Source: Magallana gigas
Lineage: Eukaryota
Direction of reading: 5' to 3'
Length of the DNA: 64,000 nt
NCBI RefSeq assembly: GCF_963853765.1
Contig: NC_088855.1
Span: 53,568,001 to 53,632,000 of the forward strand
The position numbers and the translations under genes were made by a program. Position 1 is the stretch's first letter. Every line of letters starts with the position of its first letter. Under the pieces are notes generated by a model that had not been told where the DNA came from, ran no database searches, and saw only the letters and a list, made by a program, of their open reading frames with translations. This document shows, in pieces, positions 13,054 to 23,743 of the stretch.

Positions 13054-13839
13054 TCAGCTCTTCGCGACTTTTGCAATGTTTTCTGGGAGATTGGCACCAT
13101 TTGAGATCACAAAGTCTTTCAATAGTTCAAGCTGCTTTGTAACATTGTCCAGTTTACCTTTTAGCTGCATGTTTTCCGATTCTAGATACTGCAGGCGATT
13201 TTCCATTTCCACCTGCTTCAGCTTAGCCTTTTCACGACATTTGCGAATTGCAAGATTATTTCTCGCTCTCTTTTCGAAATATTCACGGGTACCTTTTTCT
13301 GGCTGCCTCTTCTTTTTCACCGGTCCGCCAGCTGAGGGTTTCCTACCTGGTCGTCCCCGGGGGCGAGGGGTATAATCTACGTCCATAGGACTAGGGGGTG
13401 GGGTCACAAAGGAAGAGATATCCTGATCGGAGCTATCCGAATCCTCGTTAGATCCGGACAGGGAATTTTCCAGCTCACCGTCAGAACTCACTGACCCCGT
13501 GGAGTGAAGAGTTTCTCTGACCGACTGTAAACACGAGGAGACCTGGTCCGGATTAAGCACAAATTCCAAGTTCTCGTACCGGCTGAGCTGTGCGATCAGG
13601 GCCTGGTCAGGCACGGCCTGGGTCTGCACGGTGACCGGGGCAGCGTTTACCAGCGTGGTGAAGGCTTCGTTTCCAGACACGCTCTGGACAATGTCATTAG
13701 ATTTTATATCCAGAATGAGTTTCTCCAGCGTCTCGTCATTCACCTGTGTGGAATTGTTGAAAAGTTCTTGGATATCCACAGAATTTTCCAGCACCGGGTC
13801 CAAATCGAATGGGGTTCTTTCCATCATAATCTGTGACAT
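13054..13839 (-). CDS. C/EBP: CCAAT/enhancer-binding protein, activator (alpha/beta/delta) class, paralog A; intronless, 261 aa from the first ATG
   Basis: bZIP EYFEKRARNNLAIRKCREKAK plus leucine zipper. N-terminal ENSVDIQELFNNSTQVNDETL resembles the C/EBP-alpha activation box [26 protein letters not shown] phospho-motif. The ORF track starts at a GTG (13875); the first ATG is at 13839. Candidate polyA signal at 12301-12306. Confidence 0.93.
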   Translation of the reverse strand: MSQIMMERTPFDLDPVLENSVDIQELFNNSTQVNDETLEKLILDIKSNDIVQSVSGNEAFTTLVNAAPVTVQTQAVPDQALIAQLSRYENLEFVLNPDQVSSCLQSVRETLHSTGSVSSDGELENSLSGSNEDSDSSDQDISSFVTPPPSPMDVDYTPRPRGRPGRKPSAGGPVKKKRQPEKGTREYFEKRARNNLAIRKCREKAKLKQVEMENRLQYLESENMQLKGKLDNVTKQLELLKDFVISNGANLPENIAKVAKS

Positions 13840-13874
13840 GCAGTAATGTATTGGAGCGGCCGCTGCTAATACCA

Positions 13875-13883
13875 CTAGGCCAT
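13875..13883 (-). other. Two-codon out-of-frame uORF (ATG GCC TAG) in the 5' leader of C/EBP paralog A
   Basis: The only ATG between the predicted TSS (about 13950) and the main ATG. It lies 44 nt upstream of the main ATG and is out of frame. Confidence 0.6.
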
Positions 13884-17066: not shown

Positions 17067-17999
17067 TCACCTGGACATGATTTCGTCGAACTTTGTGGGT
17101 AAGGAGGCTCCAACATTGATGAATAAACTTTTGAGCACATTAAGTTCTTTTGTTAGTAAGTCTAATTTCTTTTGTAAGTTTTCGTTTTCTGTTGACAATT
17201 CGTGCACTCTTTGTTCGGTCTCTTGCTGCTTTTTCTTCGCCTTGTCCCGGCTTTTTCTCACTGCGAGATTGTTCCTCACTCGCTTGTCTACATATTCTTC
17301 AGTGCCCTTGGGTGGCTGTTTCTTTCGGTTTGGTCTGAGGGGTCCGGCGGCGGATGGCTTCCTACCAGGACGGCCACGAACTATTTCAAAAGGTGAGGTG
17401 GGAGGGGTGAGAGTCGATGATGTGACGTCGTGCTCCGATTGAGAGGGAGAGTTCACGATACTCTCGATGTCACACGTGCTGTATTCCTCCCCCTCACTGG
17501 CCGACCAGCCGGCCTCCGATATCTTTGATGTTTGCTCTTGGTTTGTCATAAAGTCAAATTCTTTGAATGTAGGCAACACACTGTCTTGTGCAGGTTGCAG
17601 TTCAATAAATGGGACACCCGTAACTGGGTCAGCGGTCTTCTCCCCCAAAATGATGTTCACTAAAGTGGCGTCGTTTACTTGTGTGCTATTGTTCAGTAGT
17701 TGTCGAATGTCGACTGAATTCTCTAAGAGCGGGTCCAAATCAAACTGGCCCTGACTATCTTGCAGAATAGTTGAAACTTTCTTACTTTGCTCAGAATCGT
17801 AGAGTACCGATTCCATCAAATTTTCTTGTGGACATGGTGAACCAGGGAAAATGTTTTCGTCAAATGAAAATACTGGGAAATCCAGCGCCTCAGATTGAGT
17901 GTTCACACCCAAAACAGACTCGAGAGTCTGTAAAACGTTTACACGCGAATCTTGAAGATTGCGGTTGTTTCGTTGGTTCACACCGGAGTTGTTAGACAT
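17067..17999 (-). CDS. C/EBP: CCAAT/enhancer-binding protein, activator class, paralog B; intronless, 310 aa
   Basis: Canonical basic region EYVDKRVRNNLAVRKSRDKAK plus zipper. Shares FDLDPxLENSVDIxxLxNNSTQVNDxTL, TPPxSP and RGRPGRKPSA blocks with paralog A. The true start may be M1 (17999) or M62 (17816). Confidence 0.93.
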   Translation of the reverse strand: MSNNSGVNQRNNRNLQDSRVNVLQTLESVLGVNTQSEALDFPVFSFDENIFPGSPCPQENLMESVLYDSEQSKKVSTILQDSQGQFDLDPLLENSVDIRQLLNNSTQVNDATLVNIILGEKTADPVTGVPFIELQPAQDSVLPTFKEFDFMTNQEQTSKISEAGWSASEGEEYSTCDIESIVNSPSQSEHDVTSSTLTPPTSPFEIVRGRPGRKPSAAGPLRPNRKKQPPKGTEEYVDKRVRNNLAVRKSRDKAKKKQQETEQRVHELSTENENLQKKLDLLTKELNVLKSLFINVGASLPTKFDEIMSR

Positions 18000-18626: not shown

Positions 18627-19490
18627 CAATATTTCGATATAGAAAAACACCCGCACTTTTAAGTCTAAACTACAGTAATACATGCATTATTAGTCGAGTT
18701 TAATACAAATATACGTATGTTCTAAAATATATCTCTTTATTTTAGTGTAAAATCGTTAAATAATCAGTACTCTGTATTATAGACAAGTATATTCTTAGTT
18801 GGAAACCCTTAAATTCAATCAATCATACTGATTTAAATGCAAAACTCCAAATAGCGTAGCATTTCCTATTTAAAAAGTTCATTAAAAGTAGGCATTATTG
18901 ACAATTTTCTTCAAAATATATCTCAGGTACATGGGTACCCTTTAAAGAGATGAGAGATATCAATATATTCATTGTTTATCAATCGTCATATAAAATTATA
19001 AAAGTTCAATATGAGAGATTTTTCTCCATGGTCGATCATACGAATGTTTTCTAGTACGAGTAAATGAATGTGAACTAGCCTGGTTCCCTGACTTCATGAC
19101 TAAATAAAGAAAGAAAACCAGGCAATGACAAGAACCAGTATTGGAAATTCCAAAAATCTAACGATCCATTCTTTCGCCAGAGGTCGCGCAAGCTTCGCTG
19201 TAACAGCAATCGGTAATCATCGGTTGTTTCCGTATATCGTACTCGGTACATCTCGGTCGATTGTTTGATGTCACTAGCGGAATCTATCGAGGCTTCCCGA
19301 ATGGGAACCGGAAACAACCGTGGATCGTCGATTAATGAATGTAATTTGTTTATATTTAAAAAAAAAGAAAAAGTATGAATATATTTACAATGTTCATGAA
19401 ATAAGTGTGTTGAAATAATTTACATAATTTGACCGGTTGCAGCAGTCTGCACTGAATACAGGAAGTGAGAATCGATTGGTGAAGCAGTTT

Positions 19491-19932
19491 ATTGCATCAC
19501 AGATTAAATTGCATGGAAGGCCATTAGTATACAGTGTACATTTGGAAGGATATTCTGTTCAAAATCCCGAGTGAATGTCAGGTGAGTGCATGGTATATAA
19601 TATAATACCCAGTCATTAATGAAACAAGTTATAATATTTTGATTTTGACGAGTTATTCGTGTTACTTTTGGTTTGTTGATATTGACAATTCTACTTCCGG
19701 TTTTTGATTTTGCAATCAAATATTCAATTGTTCTTTACAAAATTGCTTCACTGCTCGTTTCTTCTAAATTTAATTAATACAAATAACTATTATCAATAGT
19801 TTTGTTAAACAATTAATATCTTTGAGACTACATCTTGCTCAAACCTGAGGGTTGAAATCTTATTGCATCAGGTTCTAAATCAAGAGAAAGGGAGAACACT
19901 CCGATATTACTATCTTTAGTTCATGATGCAAT
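19491..19932. promoter_or_regulatory. Three perfect C/EBP-ATF response elements (TGATGCAAT) at the 5' end of C/EBP-gamma
   Basis: attgcatca at 19491-19499 and 19862-19870; tgatgcaat at 19924-19932; one-mismatch attgcttca at 19742-19750. Confidence 0.75.
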
Positions 19933-19955
19933 ATCTTTTTGTTTCAGATAAAAAG

Positions 19956-20333
19956 ATGGCACCAAAGCGTCCTGATTATGAGGGTTCAGATGGAGAGTCA
20001 TATGGTAAACCATCGAAACGTTCAAGAATGATGGAGAAAGACACAGATGAATATCTCAAAAGGAGAGAAAGAAATAACATTGCTGTTAAAAAGAGCAGGG
20101 AGCGTTCAAGACAAAAAGCCAAGGAAACAATCGAGCAAGTTAATAGGTTGAGGGCAGAAAATGAAATGTTGGAACAGAAGGTTGAAATTCTTTCAAAAGA
20201 ACTTAGTGTTTTAAAGGACTTATTTTTGGCTCATGCCGGCAATGTTGCCCAGTCAGAGCGTGCCATAGAAGCAACAGAATCAAGAGCTCCTATTCCCGAT
20301 CATCAGTACAGCTCATCAAAACAAAAACAGTGA
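19956..20333 (+). CDS. CEBPG: C/EBP-gamma (short bZIP without an activation domain), 125 aa; possibly 130 aa from a spliced upstream ATG
   Basis: DEYLKRRERNNIAVKKSRERSRQK...LRAENEMLEQKVEILSKELSVLKDLFLAHA. Acceptor tttgtttcag ends at 19947 and donor CAG|GTGAGT starts the intron at 19582. An ATG at 19575 splices in frame (MSDKKM). The ORF-track start at 19923 is intronic. AATAAA at 20490 and 20634. Confidence 0.93.
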   Translation: MAPKRPDYEGSDGESYGKPSKRSRMMEKDTDEYLKRRERNNIAVKKSRERSRQKAKETIEQVNRLRAENEMLEQKVEILSKELSVLKDLFLAHAGNVAQSERAIEATESRAPIPDHQYSSSKQKQ

Positions 20334-20990
20334 CTCTCATTTTCAGTGGGTACAAATATCATTAGTGCTGTGACCCTTGTTGTTAGAGATATTTCAGCAA
20401 AAAATCATATTCTGTACAATACACAGTCTCACAGTGCTTCAGTTTCATACATTTTAGTTTCATTCAAACGAATGAGGATTGTGTTATTGAATAAATTTCT
20501 ATGTCTTTACAGTTTGTCTTTAAAAAAAATTCAGTTTATATACTGAGTATTTAAATGAAGTGCATTTTAGATTTTGGACATTATCATCTCCGCTGTCTCT
20601 GAGTAAATTGTGGATACAGAAACTGATAGTGGCAATAAATATTTAGGGGTAGGTTGAAAAGACCAACTCCTCTATTTTAAAATCCCCATTAGAAATATAT
20701 TGAATTCACTCATTTAGCCTTTGTTGATGAGGTGCTGTCTAAGAGAGTTAAGTAAAAGTTCCAGATTTAAAAAAAATTTATACCAGAAATTTATTTCACA
20801 TATTACATGTACCTTTAATTTCAATGTTACAAAAAAACTTTGCCTGGTATCAATTTTTAATTAACAAAAAAAAGAGAAAATGTCAAAGTTATGGGTACAA
20901 TCTTGATTTTATAAATTTGTTGAAACTCTTAAAAGTAGTGTTTTAGACTTTTTCAGAATAAAAAATTATATAACTCTGACATCAGCATTA

Positions 20991-21210
20991 CTGTAAATTC
21001 CTTATTTTATGCGAGTACTTAATTCCACGATTCCACTGTTTTGCATCAATTTGTGATAATATATAAAATTGTGAGCACCAATTTTTTATAATGATTTCAT
21101 ATAGCCCAAAACTGTCCGAAAAATAAGAGCAACATTTTAAAATTCATGAGGACTGCTTCTCAGGATTTTGTGCGGAAATTAATTCCTCACATTTAATAAG
21201 GAATGTACAG
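20991..21210. mobile_element. Tc1/mariner-type MITE, 220 bp, TA target-site duplication
   Basis: TA|ctgtaaattccttatt ... aataaggaatgtacag|TA. A second diverged copy lies at 48910-49086. Confidence 0.8.
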
Positions 21211-23743
21211 TAAACAATGATAGTACATGCATAATTAAAGCAGAAACATGTAGTGCCATAAGAAGAAAAAATAGAGTCCAAACAAGAATTTTACAAAGTC
21301 TGCTATGACTGTACATTTTCTTTAGAGCATGATCCAAATCTGTAAGTGTAGTACATGGACAAAAGATGGATAGTACACTGTATATGGTTCAGACAAACGT
21401 TTTGCAAAGTGGTGTGATATGACTTTAACCTCTTGCCTTGAAACTTTGTTCAAGGTCACTGCACAAAGTTACAACCCAAAGGCACTTGATGGATGAAGTA
21501 TGAGCTAGTTGGGCTAAGGGGAGAGAATGTACAATACAGGCAAATGATGATGCATGAATAGAAAGATTCACAACATATAAGCATTTGATATAACGGTAGT
21601 CATGATGACTGTATTTCAATAAAATATTTTAAAATATTTACATTTGCAAACACGCTTCCTTATATGAACCTATAGAATAGCAAAAATGTTCAATTCTGCA
21701 TGAACGTTTTTGTGACGTTACAATGATAACGCATATATGCTTATTGCAATATTGTAAACATAAAAACACTGAACATTATATTATTGATTCTAAACAGTTT
21801 GCCAATATCAAACGTAAATATAAGTAATAAACAGCAATGTTAAAAAGTTTGCAGGGATATGAACTTGGTTGGTACATGATGAAATCTTTACTTTTTAAAT
21901 TTTTAAATATATTTCTTAATTGCACTAAATAATGGTTTTTAGTTAATGTACAAAACAAATCATAATAGTATCATATTATAAATGGCAAATTAGCTGTGAA
22001 ATTAGTTTACTCTCACTGTTGAAGAATTCCCTTAGAACTGACATCTAGGGCAAGATAAGGGTTTTGGACAATCCTACCCTCAGTACACAGCTCTTTACAT
22101 TCCACCCTGGTGCATATTAATGCTCGGGTTCAAATGTAAAAGTCAAAGAATTATGTCACATGGAGACCTTGGAGTAATACAAAACACCCATGGACTACGT
22201 CACTCACCTGAGTAACAGATCTTAAAAGAATTATGTTATCCTTTTCAAATTTTTTTTCATTACCGGTAAATTTCTGAACTCAGAAAGGTGAGCCAGAGGG
22301 GAACACAGAGTTTTTAACAAATCATGAAATGGAGCTACACTATATACTGTATGTATTTGGGTATAAGAAATATCACAAGTTTTGTGGCAGACTTGAGCCT
22401 AAACATTGTTACATTTATATTCGTACACATAATTTGGCATTCATTTGGAACCCCATTATGCCCTGTGGCCAGTGGTCTAGCATCGTAACCTCGGGAGATT
22501 TTTCTCAGTATATTCTTAAGTTGAACTTTGCCCCCTCCTCCTATAATAATAGTGGACGGGGTGGTCATAAATAATACAAATACATGTACAGTACACAAAT
22601 TGCTTTCATCATAATTTCACAATTTGAAGTTCTCTATGATTTCCCTTTTATACATTTCTATAGTGATATTTTTGCATCCCTCCTTGAGGAAAACTAGACC
22701 ACAGACGCCTGACATCAAACATTTTTTTTTCAATAATAAAATTATTCCCTGTGCTACTACTATTATAATATTATTATCATTAAAGTAGAGGGGATAATTT
22801 TCTTATTAAATGAAATATTTTTAATTAAATATTATAACCTGTGCTTTAGACAAAGGTTTAACAAGTTGGAATTACAGCACAATATCATAGTAAACCTCTG
22901 TTAGGCTGTCTAAAAATTAATTATATGTTTAACATAATCCACGTACATAGGTTTAAGAGAAATTGACGATTAAAATAAACAAACCCCAATTTCAATTTAA
23001 TTTTTTCCAGTTTGGTGTTACTTTTTGCAACTACCGTAAAATCTGTAGATTCTGCAATAGGACATGTTAAGGGCACATGGATTATACAGCCTTTAATATA
23101 AACAGGAGAGATGATGAAACAGCTACTCTATATGTAGCTTGAATATTCAATTTATTTGTATTAATAGAAATGAATAAAAAACCACTTGATTGAAAATTAT
23201 GTTTAAATTTTATTACCTTACCTTGTACGTTTGGTATTTTCAATGATGACATTATAGATTAAATGTAGAATCAACTTTGGACAGCCTTATAAATTATGGC
23301 ATTTCTGGTGCTGTTATAAAAGGGAAGATTTTTAAGACACCACATTATTTTTCCATTTTCTTATTATCTCCTAAAAGGATGGGTATTTTAATAATTTGGA
23401 ATCTCTATAACCTTTGGATGATTTATTTTCAAGTTTGGTTGAAATTGACACATAGGTTCTAGAGAATAAATATACAATGCAAGTTTACAGACAAAAGCCT
23501 GTAAACAGAAAAGCTTACAGCTCATGAAGGCTTTACCACATTATTTATTAATTTTCTTTCTATGCTTTCTAAATTTTAACATTGTTAAAATAAAAGTTTG
23601 ATCATTTTTACTCCTGATCTGGCCACTGTGATATTGACAGACTACAAGTAGCACTATTTTCTATTAAATAGAAATGAGAATGTACTGGTAAAATAAAATA
23701 CAAAGACTAATATTGAAAAGCACATTTATTTCAATGAACAGTA

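What the first reader, a model, noticed from the sequence alone, without database searches (positions are those of the whole stretch)
19491..19932. Three perfect ATF4-C/EBP response elements clustered on C/EBP-gamma suggest a conserved integrated-stress-response loop
Seen: TGATGCAAT three times in 442 bp (one near the promoter, two in the 5' intron), a one-mismatch copy at 19742, and a short MEGH* ORF at 19513-19527 that would be a uORF if the TSS is upstream of it. My rough estimate is under one such 9-mer by chance in the whole window. Known: TGATGCAAT is the ATF4-C/EBP composite element, and mammalian CEBPG is both an ATF4 target and an ATF4 partner. Inference: an ATF4 to C/EBP-gamma positive-feedback loop operates in this invertebrate.
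Basis: partly seen in the sequence, partly recalled or inferred. Interest (0 to 1): 0.75.

Follow-up and report, generated by a model that had tools for sequence, protein, structure and literature searches.

The report
Conserved stress-response sites on oyster C/EBP-gamma
Three perfect ATF4/C-EBP composite binding sites sit at the start and in the first intron of an oyster C/EBP-gamma gene; they are conserved, and one recurs in other molluscs, amphioxus and vertebrates, so a link known in mammals looks ancient.

Summary
TGATGCAAT occurs three times in the 64-kb window, all within 442 bp at the 5' end of a 125-aa C/EBP-gamma gene. The genome has one copy per 50 kb, so about 0.45 such triplets are expected genome-wide. 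RNA contigs confirm the 366-nt GT..AG intron (19582-19947). Site 1 therefore lies at the 5' end of exon 1, 11 nt after a reverse CCAAT box, and sites 2 and 3 are intronic. The MEGH* uORF is transcribed.

A second oyster (86% protein identity) keeps all three sites, while neutral intron sequence has fallen to about 44% identity. The CCAAT-N10-12-ATTGCATCA promoter module, followed about 210-260 bp later by a C/EBP site, is collinear in Mytilus and Pecten. The promoter part recurs in Haliotis. Amphioxus, a pika and a bream also carry a TGATGCAAT or TGATGCAAC site upstream of CEBPG.

The oyster has an ATF4 gene, and its bZIP is predicted to pair with C/EBP-gamma. Exact sites are enriched near ISR-type genes (7 against 1.5 expected).

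The one-mismatch copy is not conserved. Binding and stress induction remain untested. ATF4 control of Cebpg is already known in mouse, so this is a new member of a known kind.

The parts
19475..19479 (-). Reverse CCAAT box (ATTGG), 11 nt upstream of site 1
   Evidence: Read directly. ATTGG-N10-12-ATTGCATCA is kept in the second oyster, Mytilus, Pecten and Haliotis. Pinctada has ATTGG-N11-ATTGCACAAT.
19491..19499 (-). CARE 1 (TGATGCAAT), at the 5' end of exon 1 or in the core promoter
   Evidence: It lies in an 84%-conserved block, against about 44% identity for neutral intron.
19487..19581 (+). Exon 1 (5' leader). The 5' end is at or upstream of 19487 and is not mapped precisely.
   Evidence: An RNA contig end joined to adapter lies at 19487, and there is some RNA depth at 19356. 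The splice joint 19581|19948 appears in 4 runs and in a spliced contig of a sister species.
19513..19527 (+). Four-codon uORF MEGH*
   Evidence: It lies inside transcribed exon 1. It is kept as MEGH* in L084 and as MEGC* in L004. It is not seen in the putative exon 1 of Mytilus or Pecten.
19575..19577 (+). Exon-1 ATG, in frame with the main ORF after splicing (adds MSDKK). Weak context, and absent in L004.
   Evidence: (P0003 N-terminus).
19582..19947 (+). Intron 1 (366 nt, GT..AG)
   Evidence: Joints in X21, X22, X3 and X1.
19664..19722 (.). Conserved intronic block: ETS-type CTTCCGG (19694-19700) plus C/EBP-type site TGATTTTGCAATCA (19705-19718)
   Evidence: 92% identical to L004. GATNNNGCAATC is unique in each locus and lies +205 to +261 from the promoter site in the oyster, L004, Mytilus and Pecten. 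Pinctada has it flipped at +203.
19862..19870 (-). CARE 2 (TGATGCAAT), intronic
   Evidence: It lies in an 81%-conserved block, 19858-19905. Pinctada has GTTGCATCAGCTTCTAAAA with the same flank.
19924..19932 (+). CARE 3 (TGATGCAAT), intronic, 16-24 nt before the 3' splice site. It forms a 19-nt inverted repeat with CARE 2.
   Evidence: The 9-mer is kept in L004 with an indel, in otherwise diverged sequence.
19956..20333 (+). C/EBP-gamma coding sequence (125 aa plus stop), all in exon 2
   Evidence: bZIP_2 at 3.3e-14. Best named hits are C/EBP-gamma. There are 31 invariant columns from oyster to pika.
19742..19750 (-). One-mismatch copy TGAAGCAAT, judged not part of the module
   Evidence: Deleted in L004, changed in L001 and L002, and A>T at 19750 in RNA contigs.

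Best explanation
The three TGATGCAAT sites are working C/EBP-ATF composite response elements (CAREs) of the oyster C/EBP-gamma gene. One sits at the transcription start beside a CCAAT box, and two sit in the 366-nt first intron, together with a conserved C/EBP site and an ETS site. The proposed mechanism is inferred by analogy with mouse. Stress-activated eIF2-alpha kinases raise ATF4 translation. ATF4 pairs with a C/EBP partner, either basal C/EBP-gamma or a neighbouring activator C/EBP. The pair binds these sites and raises C/EBP-gamma transcription, which supplies more of ATF4's preferred partner. This is a feed-forward loop and possibly a self-reinforcing one. The promoter site appears to be ancestral; oysters have added two more perfect copies.
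For: Shown:
- The cluster is far beyond chance and is single-copy DNA, not a repeat family.
- The gene structure places the sites at the 5' end and in intron 1.
- All three sites are kept in a second oyster whose neutral intron sequence is only 43-45% identical, while the blocks holding the sites are 81-92% identical.
- A collinear module runs CCAAT, N10-12, ATTGCATCA, a candidate GT donor at about +87 to +119, then a C/EBP site at +205 to +261. It is present in Mytilus and Pecten, and its promoter part is present in Haliotis.
- In amphioxus, TGATGCAAT lies between CCAAT boxes upstream of CEBPG. A pika and a bream share TGATGCAACC-N4/5-GGCAACAC upstream of CEBPG, and in the bream a TATAAA lies 21 nt before it.
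- Every exact copy in the roughly 82 kb of mollusc and amphioxus loci fetched lies in the interval between the divergent C/EBP gene and CEBPG.
- The oyster has an ATF4 ortholog with basic region NKNAAIRYRNKKR.
- The ATF4 and C/EBP-gamma bZIPs are predicted to pair in register: ipSAE 0.64 against a best control of 0.01, runs agree in at least 93% of contacts, partner pLDDT at least 82. The mark was reached by 51 of 78 solved complexes and 2 of 108 mismatched pairs.
- Exact sites are enriched in 76 kb around ISR-type genes: 7 against 1.5 expected, P=0.001, 0 of 100 shuffles. A ChaC paralog carries 3 exact copies plus 2 TGATGCAAC, and sestrin carries a pair 31 bp apart. Controls were 2 against 1.4 expected, and 0 in the rest of the window.

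From the literature:
- ATF4 ChIP signal on the mouse Cebpg promoter under amino-acid starvation (PMC9303372).
- CEBPG is both a partner and a target of ATF4 (PMC9941348).
- The Drosophila CEBPG homolog Irbp18 is the required partner of crc/ATF4 (PMC13585082).
- CEBPG is listed among the genes raised by heat in one family of the mussel Perna (PMC10902150).
Against: There are no binding data and no stress-expression data for the oyster gene.
- In Pinctada the promoter position holds a pure C/EBP palindrome (ATTGCACAAT), so the ATF half is not universally kept.
- Mya shows no site within 8 kb.
- The ISR-gene enrichment is carried largely by one ChaC paralog. Without it the count is 4 against 1.3 expected, P=0.046, and most of those sites are kilobases from unmapped starts.
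- The complex prediction cannot tell which bZIP family member pairs.
- In mouse, C/EBP-gamma itself was not found on the Cebpg promoter (PMC9303372), which argues against a true auto-feedback arm.
- The promoter site lies in a shared interval 0.5-1.5 kb from the ATG of a divergent C/EBP gene, so it may also, or instead, serve that gene.
Confidence: 0.6

Rival explanations
1. C/EBP-only control. The conserved feature is the C/EBP half-site. The sites are bound by C/EBP homodimers or heterodimers, such as the two activator C/EBPs next door or C/EBP-gamma itself. This would give family auto- or cross-regulation with no ATF4 or stress input.
For: Pinctada has a pure C/EBP palindrome at the promoter position. 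A separate, deeply conserved C/EBP consensus site sits in the intron. Three C/EBP genes are clustered here.
Against: The ATF half (TGATG) is letter-perfect in all three sites of two oysters, and in Mytilus, Pecten, Haliotis, amphioxus, pika and bream. By established knowledge, C/EBP dimers prefer ATTGCGCAAT-type palindromes. That form is used at the intronic site, so the two site types are kept distinct.
Confidence: 0.15
2. The sites are real composite elements, but the ATF-side partner is a different bZIP, such as an ATF2, ATF3 or ATF5-like factor or a lineage-specific Xrp1-like factor. The input would then be a pathway other than the eIF2-alpha/ATF4 response.
For: The genome holds at least 26 bZIP_1 matches. 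The complex test does not discriminate among family members. In Drosophila the CEBPG homolog also pairs with Xrp1 (PMC6946401, PMC13585082).
Against: TGATGCAAT is the sequence reported for ATF4-C/EBP dimers in mammals (PMC9941348, citing Huggins 2016). Mouse ATF4 occupies the Cebpg promoter (PMC9303372). The same 9-mer is enriched at ChaC and sestrin loci, which are classic ATF4 targets.
Confidence: 0.1
3. The cluster mainly serves the divergent upstream activator C/EBP gene (17067-17999, minus strand), acting as a shared or bidirectional enhancer rather than a C/EBP-gamma element.
For: In Mytilus, Pecten, Haliotis, Pinctada and amphioxus the promoter site lies only 0.5-0.8 kb from the ATG of the divergent C/EBP gene. 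Mammalian CEBPB is also an ATF4 target (PMC9941348).
Against: In the oyster, site 1 lies within a few bases of the mapped 5' end of C/EBP-gamma RNA, and sites 2 and 3 are inside its intron. RNA of the other gene stops near 18.0-18.1 kb, 1.4 kb away. In vertebrates, where CEBPA is far away, the site stays with CEBPG.
Confidence: 0.1
4. The cluster is a chance grouping of an AT-rich 9-mer with no function.
For: Single copies occur every 50 kb or so. One-mismatch copies are not enriched.
Against: About 0.45 triple clusters are expected genome-wide, and this one sits on the one gene predicted a priori. The sites are kept against a 44% neutral background. The module is collinear across Pteriomorphia.
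Confidence: 0.03

Closest known systems
Mammalian C/EBP-ATF response elements (CAREs/AAREs) of ATF4 target genes: CHOP/DDIT3, ASNS, TRIB3 and the intronic sites of SLC38A2 and aminoacyl-tRNA synthetase genes
   Same: Same 9-bp composite (TGATGNAAN; here the CHOP-type TGATGCAAT). Same promoter or first-intron placement, and several copies per gene. The intronic and multi-copy precedents are from my own knowledge plus Shan et al. 2016 as cited in PMC9941348.
   Different: The host is an oyster gene, and no binding or induction has been measured. One site lies at the transcription start next to a CCAAT box.
Mouse Cebpg as a direct ATF4 target, with the ATF4-C/EBP-gamma heterodimer as the main CARE-binding species
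   Same: Same gene and same logic: ATF4 induces its own dimer partner. A TGATGCAAC site lies upstream of CEBPG in pika and bream. ATF4 ChIP signal is reported on the mouse Cebpg promoter (PMC9303372).
   Different: Vertebrates show one TGATGCAAC, while the oyster has three perfect TGATGCAAT. In mouse, C/EBP-gamma was not detected on its own promoter, so a feedback arm is unsupported there.
Drosophila Irbp18 (CEBPG homolog) with crc (ATF4), and intronic crc sites in Thor and dgp-1
   Same: An invertebrate ATF4/C/EBP-gamma partnership with first-intron response elements (PMC13585082).
   Different: My term search of that paper found no mention of Irbp18 expression or mRNA, so it does not appear to report the Irbp18 gene as a crc target. 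Here the evidence concerns cis-elements on the C/EBP-gamma gene.
ER-stress element ERSE (CCAAT-N9-CCACG; NF-Y plus ATF6)
   Same: A CCAAT box at a fixed short distance (10-12 nt) from a stress-bZIP site, conserved across species.
   Different: The partner site is a CARE, not CCACG, and its orientation relative to the CCAAT box differs. The resemblance is from my own knowledge and was not tested.

Membership tests
[quoted passage not shown] | 9-bp composite of an ATF half-site and a C/EBP half-site, TGATG(N)AA(N) | tested here: met
   Three exact TGATGCAAT copies.
[quoted passage not shown] | Located in the promoter or a 5' intron of the regulated gene | tested here: met
   The RNA-defined exon 1 and intron 1 place site 1 at the 5' end and sites 2 and 3 in intron 1.
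[quoted passage not shown] | Under purifying selection (phylogenetic footprint) | tested here: met
   Kept in a second oyster against 43-45% neutral identity. The promoter site is kept in Mytilus, Pecten, Haliotis, amphioxus and vertebrates. It is not kept in Pinctada (C/EBP palindrome) and was not found in Mya.
[quoted passage not shown] | Bound by an ATF4-C/EBP heterodimer | not testable with these tools
   Only indirect support. An ATF4 ortholog is present. The predicted bZIP pairing scored 0.64 against a best control of 0.01 (51 of 78 solved complexes and 2 of 108 mismatched pairs reached the mark), which is family-level support only.
[quoted passage not shown] | Confers induction by eIF2-alpha kinase stress or ATF4 | not testable with these tools
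   No oyster stress series could be laid. The only hint is a Perna heat-stress gene list (PMC10902150).
C/EBP-gamma (CEBPG/Irbp18) subfamily | Short bZIP protein with a C/EBP basic region (RRERNNxAVxKSR), the zipper ending LSKELSVLKDLFLxHA, and no long activation domain | tested here: met
   125 aa; bZIP_2 at 3.3e-14. There are 31 invariant columns with pika, bream and amphioxus CEBPG. Best named hits are C/EBP-gamma.
C/EBP-gamma (CEBPG/Irbp18) subfamily | Head-to-head linkage with an activator C/EBP gene | tested here: met
   Seen in the window and in Pinctada, Mytilus, Pecten, Haliotis, amphioxus and bream.
Stress-regulated uORF leader (ATF4/CHOP type) | A uORF inside the transcribed leader, conserved, with an architecture that gates the main ORF | tested here: inconclusive
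   The uORF is transcribed and kept in three oysters. It has only 4 codons, does not overlap the main ORF, and has no ATG counterpart in the putative exon 1 of Mytilus or Pecten. Its ATG also lies inside a conserved ATTGCATGG motif, which could instead be a protein-binding site.

The most novel reading that the evidence does not exclude
A CCAAT-box plus CARE module at the transcription start of CEBPG is an ancestral bilaterian cis-regulatory element, over 550 million years old, that ties the supply of C/EBP-gamma to ATF4 activity. On this reading the ATF4 to CEBPG feed-forward step belongs to the original integrated stress response circuit. Pteriomorph bivalves added a fixed intronic C/EBP site, and oysters tripled the CARE.
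Probability: 0.45. Interest if true: 0.55.

Novelty: new member of a known kind. Interest (0 to 1): 0.45.

Why it matters
ATF4 needs a C/EBP partner, and in mammals it switches on the gene for that partner. A letter-perfect, conserved set of the same response elements on the oyster gene, with a counterpart in other molluscs, amphioxus, fish and a mammal, suggests this partner-supply step is an old, hard-wired part of the integrated stress response. It does not look like a vertebrate addition. For oyster biology it offers a compact (about 500 bp) candidate stress-responsive promoter-intron module. It also marks C/EBP-gamma as a likely read-out of eIF2-alpha kinase stress from heat, air exposure, starvation or infection.

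Tried and rejected
- The fourth, one-mismatch site (19742) is rejected. It is deleted in L004 and variable in L001, L002 and the RNA contigs, and one-mismatch copies are under-represented in the window.
- The CCAAT-N9-13-CARE pattern has 60 genome-wide hits, many of them in repeat families, so it gave no clear ISR-wide module. I did not annotate the hits.
- Precise TSS mapping failed. Raw-read depth on exon 1 was under 1x. The adapter-joined contig end at 19487 is only suggestive, because a similar end at 17067 lies inside another mRNA. The 5' 32 nt of the spliced contig L084 match nothing in the window and may be chimeric.
- The transcripts L005-L007, from an unknown bivalve at 65% protein identity, show no CARE in a leader of about 200 nt. 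This is uninformative because their promoter and intron are not available.
- Mya arenaria has no site and no divergent C/EBP gene within 8 kb. I treat this as no data, not as absence.
- RTP801/DDIT4 (PF07809) was not found in the genome.
- The MAFFT alignment of pika against bream failed. The shared element was read by eye.
- Literature searches found no report of CAREs on an invertebrate CEBPG gene.
- Huggins et al. 2016 could not be read.

Full report
**1. Observation**

TGATGCAAT occurs exactly three times in the 64-kb window: at 19491 (-), 19862 (-) and 19924 (+). Dinucleotide shuffles of the window expect 1.42 copies in all.

The whole 564-Mb genome holds 11,342 copies, one per 49.7 kb. 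A 442-bp span therefore expects 0.009 copies, and the whole genome expects only about 0.45 triple clusters of this tightness.

The 521-bp region is single-copy in the genome, so the cluster does not come from a repeat family.

**2. The gene**

The ORF at 19956-20333 encodes a 125-aa protein. It has a bZIP_2 domain at 3.3e-14, and its best named relatives are C/EBP-gamma of bivalves, gastropods, amphioxus and vertebrates. The basic region and zipper share 31 invariant columns from oyster to pika.

Run labels ('oyster metagenome') and an 81% match of the genome's ATF4 to Saccostrea place the window in a Crassostrea/Magallana-type oyster.

**3. Transcript structure**

- Reads and contigs of four RNA runs show one joint that skips 366 nt with GT..AG ends. 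The intron is 19582-19947, and the strand signal fits a plus-strand RNA.
- A spliced contig from a sister species shows the same junction.
- Exon 1 reaches at least back to 19487. A contig end there is joined to adapter, and some RNA depth is also seen at 19356. The exact start is not mapped.
- Site 1 (19491-19499) therefore sits at the very 5' end of the transcribed region or in the core promoter. Sites 2 and 3 are intronic.
- The uORF lies inside the leader.
- An in-frame ATG at 19575 would add MSDKK to the protein, but it is missing in the second oyster.

**4. Conservation among oysters**

A contig from another oyster (L004, protein 86% identical) carries all three exact sites in the same order and orientation. 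Identity between the two species, by segment:

| Segment | Identity |
|---|---|
| Ordinary intron stretches | 43-45% |
| CCAAT / site 1 / uORF block | 84% |
| Intron block 19664-19722 | 92% |
| Site 2 block | 81% |

Site 3 is retained as a 9-mer with an indel next to it. The one-mismatch copy is deleted in L004 and variable in closer relatives, so it is not part of the module.

Sites 2 and 3 form a 19-nt inverted repeat. All three sites share TATTGCATCA, which hints at local duplication.

**5. Deeper conservation**

Upstream of CEBPG, in the interval shared with a divergent activator C/EBP gene, Mytilus, Pecten and Haliotis each have a single exact copy. In each it has the same orientation as site 1 and lies 10-12 nt after a reverse CCAAT box.

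In Mytilus and Pecten a candidate GT donor follows at about +87 to +119. A C/EBP-type site, GATNNNGCAATC, is unique in each locus and lies at +205 to +261. In the two oysters it lies at +215 and +216. The whole module is therefore collinear across pteriomorph bivalves, which argues for common descent and against chance.

Pinctada keeps the CCAAT box, the spacing, the intronic ETS/C-EBP block and a site-2-like GTTGCATCAG. At the promoter position, however, it has a pure C/EBP palindrome. Mya shows nothing within 8 kb.

Outside molluscs:
- Amphioxus has TGATGCAAT between CCAAT boxes, 3.8 kb before the ATG.
- A pika and a bream share TGATGCAACC, 4-5 nt, then GGCAACAC upstream of CEBPG.
- In the bream a TATAAA lies 21 nt before the site, which would place the site at the start of transcription, as in the oyster.

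**6. Does the oyster have the rest of the pathway?**

A 326-aa open frame on chromosome 7 (the last exon plus read-through from the intron before it) ends in an ATF4-type bZIP with basic region NKNAAIRYRNKKR. It matches proteins named ATF-4-like, CREB2, or 'activating transcription factor of chaperone'.

Its bZIP is predicted to pair in register with the C/EBP-gamma bZIP. The score was 0.64 against a best control of 0.01, the runs agreed in at least 93% of contacts, and the partner pLDDT was at least 82. The mark was reached by 51 of 78 solved complexes and 2 of 108 mismatched pairs. A pass does not say which family member binds.

In 76 kb around ATF4, ASNS, three ChaC genes, sestrin and 4E-BP there are 7 exact sites against 1.5 expected (P=0.001; 0 of 100 shuffles reach 7). 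One ChaC paralog has 3 exact copies plus 2 TGATGCAAC around exon 1, and sestrin has a pair 31 bp apart. Controls show no excess: 22 other bZIP loci have 2 against 1.4 expected, and the rest of the window has none. Without the ChaC paralog the excess is marginal (P=0.046).

**7. Known biology**

- In mouse cells ATF4 is recruited to the Cebpg promoter on amino-acid starvation, but C/EBP-gamma itself is not (PMC9303372).
- CEBPG is listed as both a partner and a target of ATF4 (PMC9941348).
- In Drosophila the CEBPG homolog Irbp18 is the required partner of crc/ATF4, and crc sites lie in first introns (PMC13585082).
- A Perna heat-stress study lists CEBPG among raised genes in one family (PMC10902150).
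- I found no report of these elements on an invertebrate CEBPG gene.

**8. Verdict**

The most likely reading (about 0.6) is a working set of CAREs that couples C/EBP-gamma transcription to an ATF4-type/C-EBP dimer. A deeply conserved promoter copy sits beside a CCAAT box, and oysters have two added intronic copies.

The main rival is C/EBP-only control, supported by the Pinctada palindrome and the intronic C/EBP site. Binding, stress induction and the self-feedback arm are all inferred, not shown.

Because the ATF4 to CEBPG link is already established in mammals, this is a new member of a known kind. Its added value is the evidence that the promoter element is ancient.

Noticed in passing
window 13054-13875 (-), 17067-17999 (-); G000:C3:53566431-53566589 (just before the window): Two activator-type C/EBP genes lie upstream of C/EBP-gamma, one of them head-to-head with it. 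A further bZIP open frame of 373 aa lies just outside the window start. The head-to-head C/EBP/CEBPG pairing recurs in Pinctada, Mytilus, Pecten, Haliotis, amphioxus and bream.
   Followed up: partly
window 20985-21030: A short stretch in or just after the C/EBP-gamma 3' UTR has very high RNA depth on both strands, many variant letters, and loose ends running into unrelated sequence. It looks like a dispersed repeat.
   Followed up: no
window 21784-21967: An expressed patch on both strands shows 'opposite strands' joints at 21836/21845-21873 and loose ends at 21808 and 21849. It may be an inverted-repeat element or a hairpin transcript.
   Followed up: no
L076 (G000:C7:50840001-50850000), minus strand: The oyster ATF4 gene has an N-terminal exon (MDMDILEMDQFPLFEDL...) followed by an intron, with the bZIP in the last exon. 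An out-of-frame upstream ORF of 65-67 codons overlaps the presumed ATF4 start, as in the inhibitory uORF2 of vertebrate ATF4. The leader structure was not checked with RNA.
   Followed up: partly
L080 (G000:C6:11298001-11308000) and L082 (G000:C9:92001-102000): A ChaC paralog carries 3 exact TGATGCAAT and 2 TGATGCAAC within 3.6 kb around its first coding exon. Sestrin has TGATGCAAT and TGATGCAAC 31 bp apart, 1.45 kb before its first matched exon. Both are candidate oyster ATF4 targets.
   Followed up: partly
L010 10851-16390 (-), L011 14342-16411 (-): A PBP-domain gene (PF01161, MRPL38-like) lies downstream of CEBPG on the opposite strand in Pecten and Mya.
   Followed up: no
L008 3893-3922 (Pinctada): TGACGTGG, an ATF6/XBP1-type core, sits 11 nt before the site-2-like GTTGCATCA in the Pinctada CEBPG intron.
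   Followed up: no
window 19458-19467: An ETS-type ACAGGAAGTG lies 8 nt before the CCAAT box. Its conservation could not be checked because the L004 contig starts at 19473.
   Followed up: no
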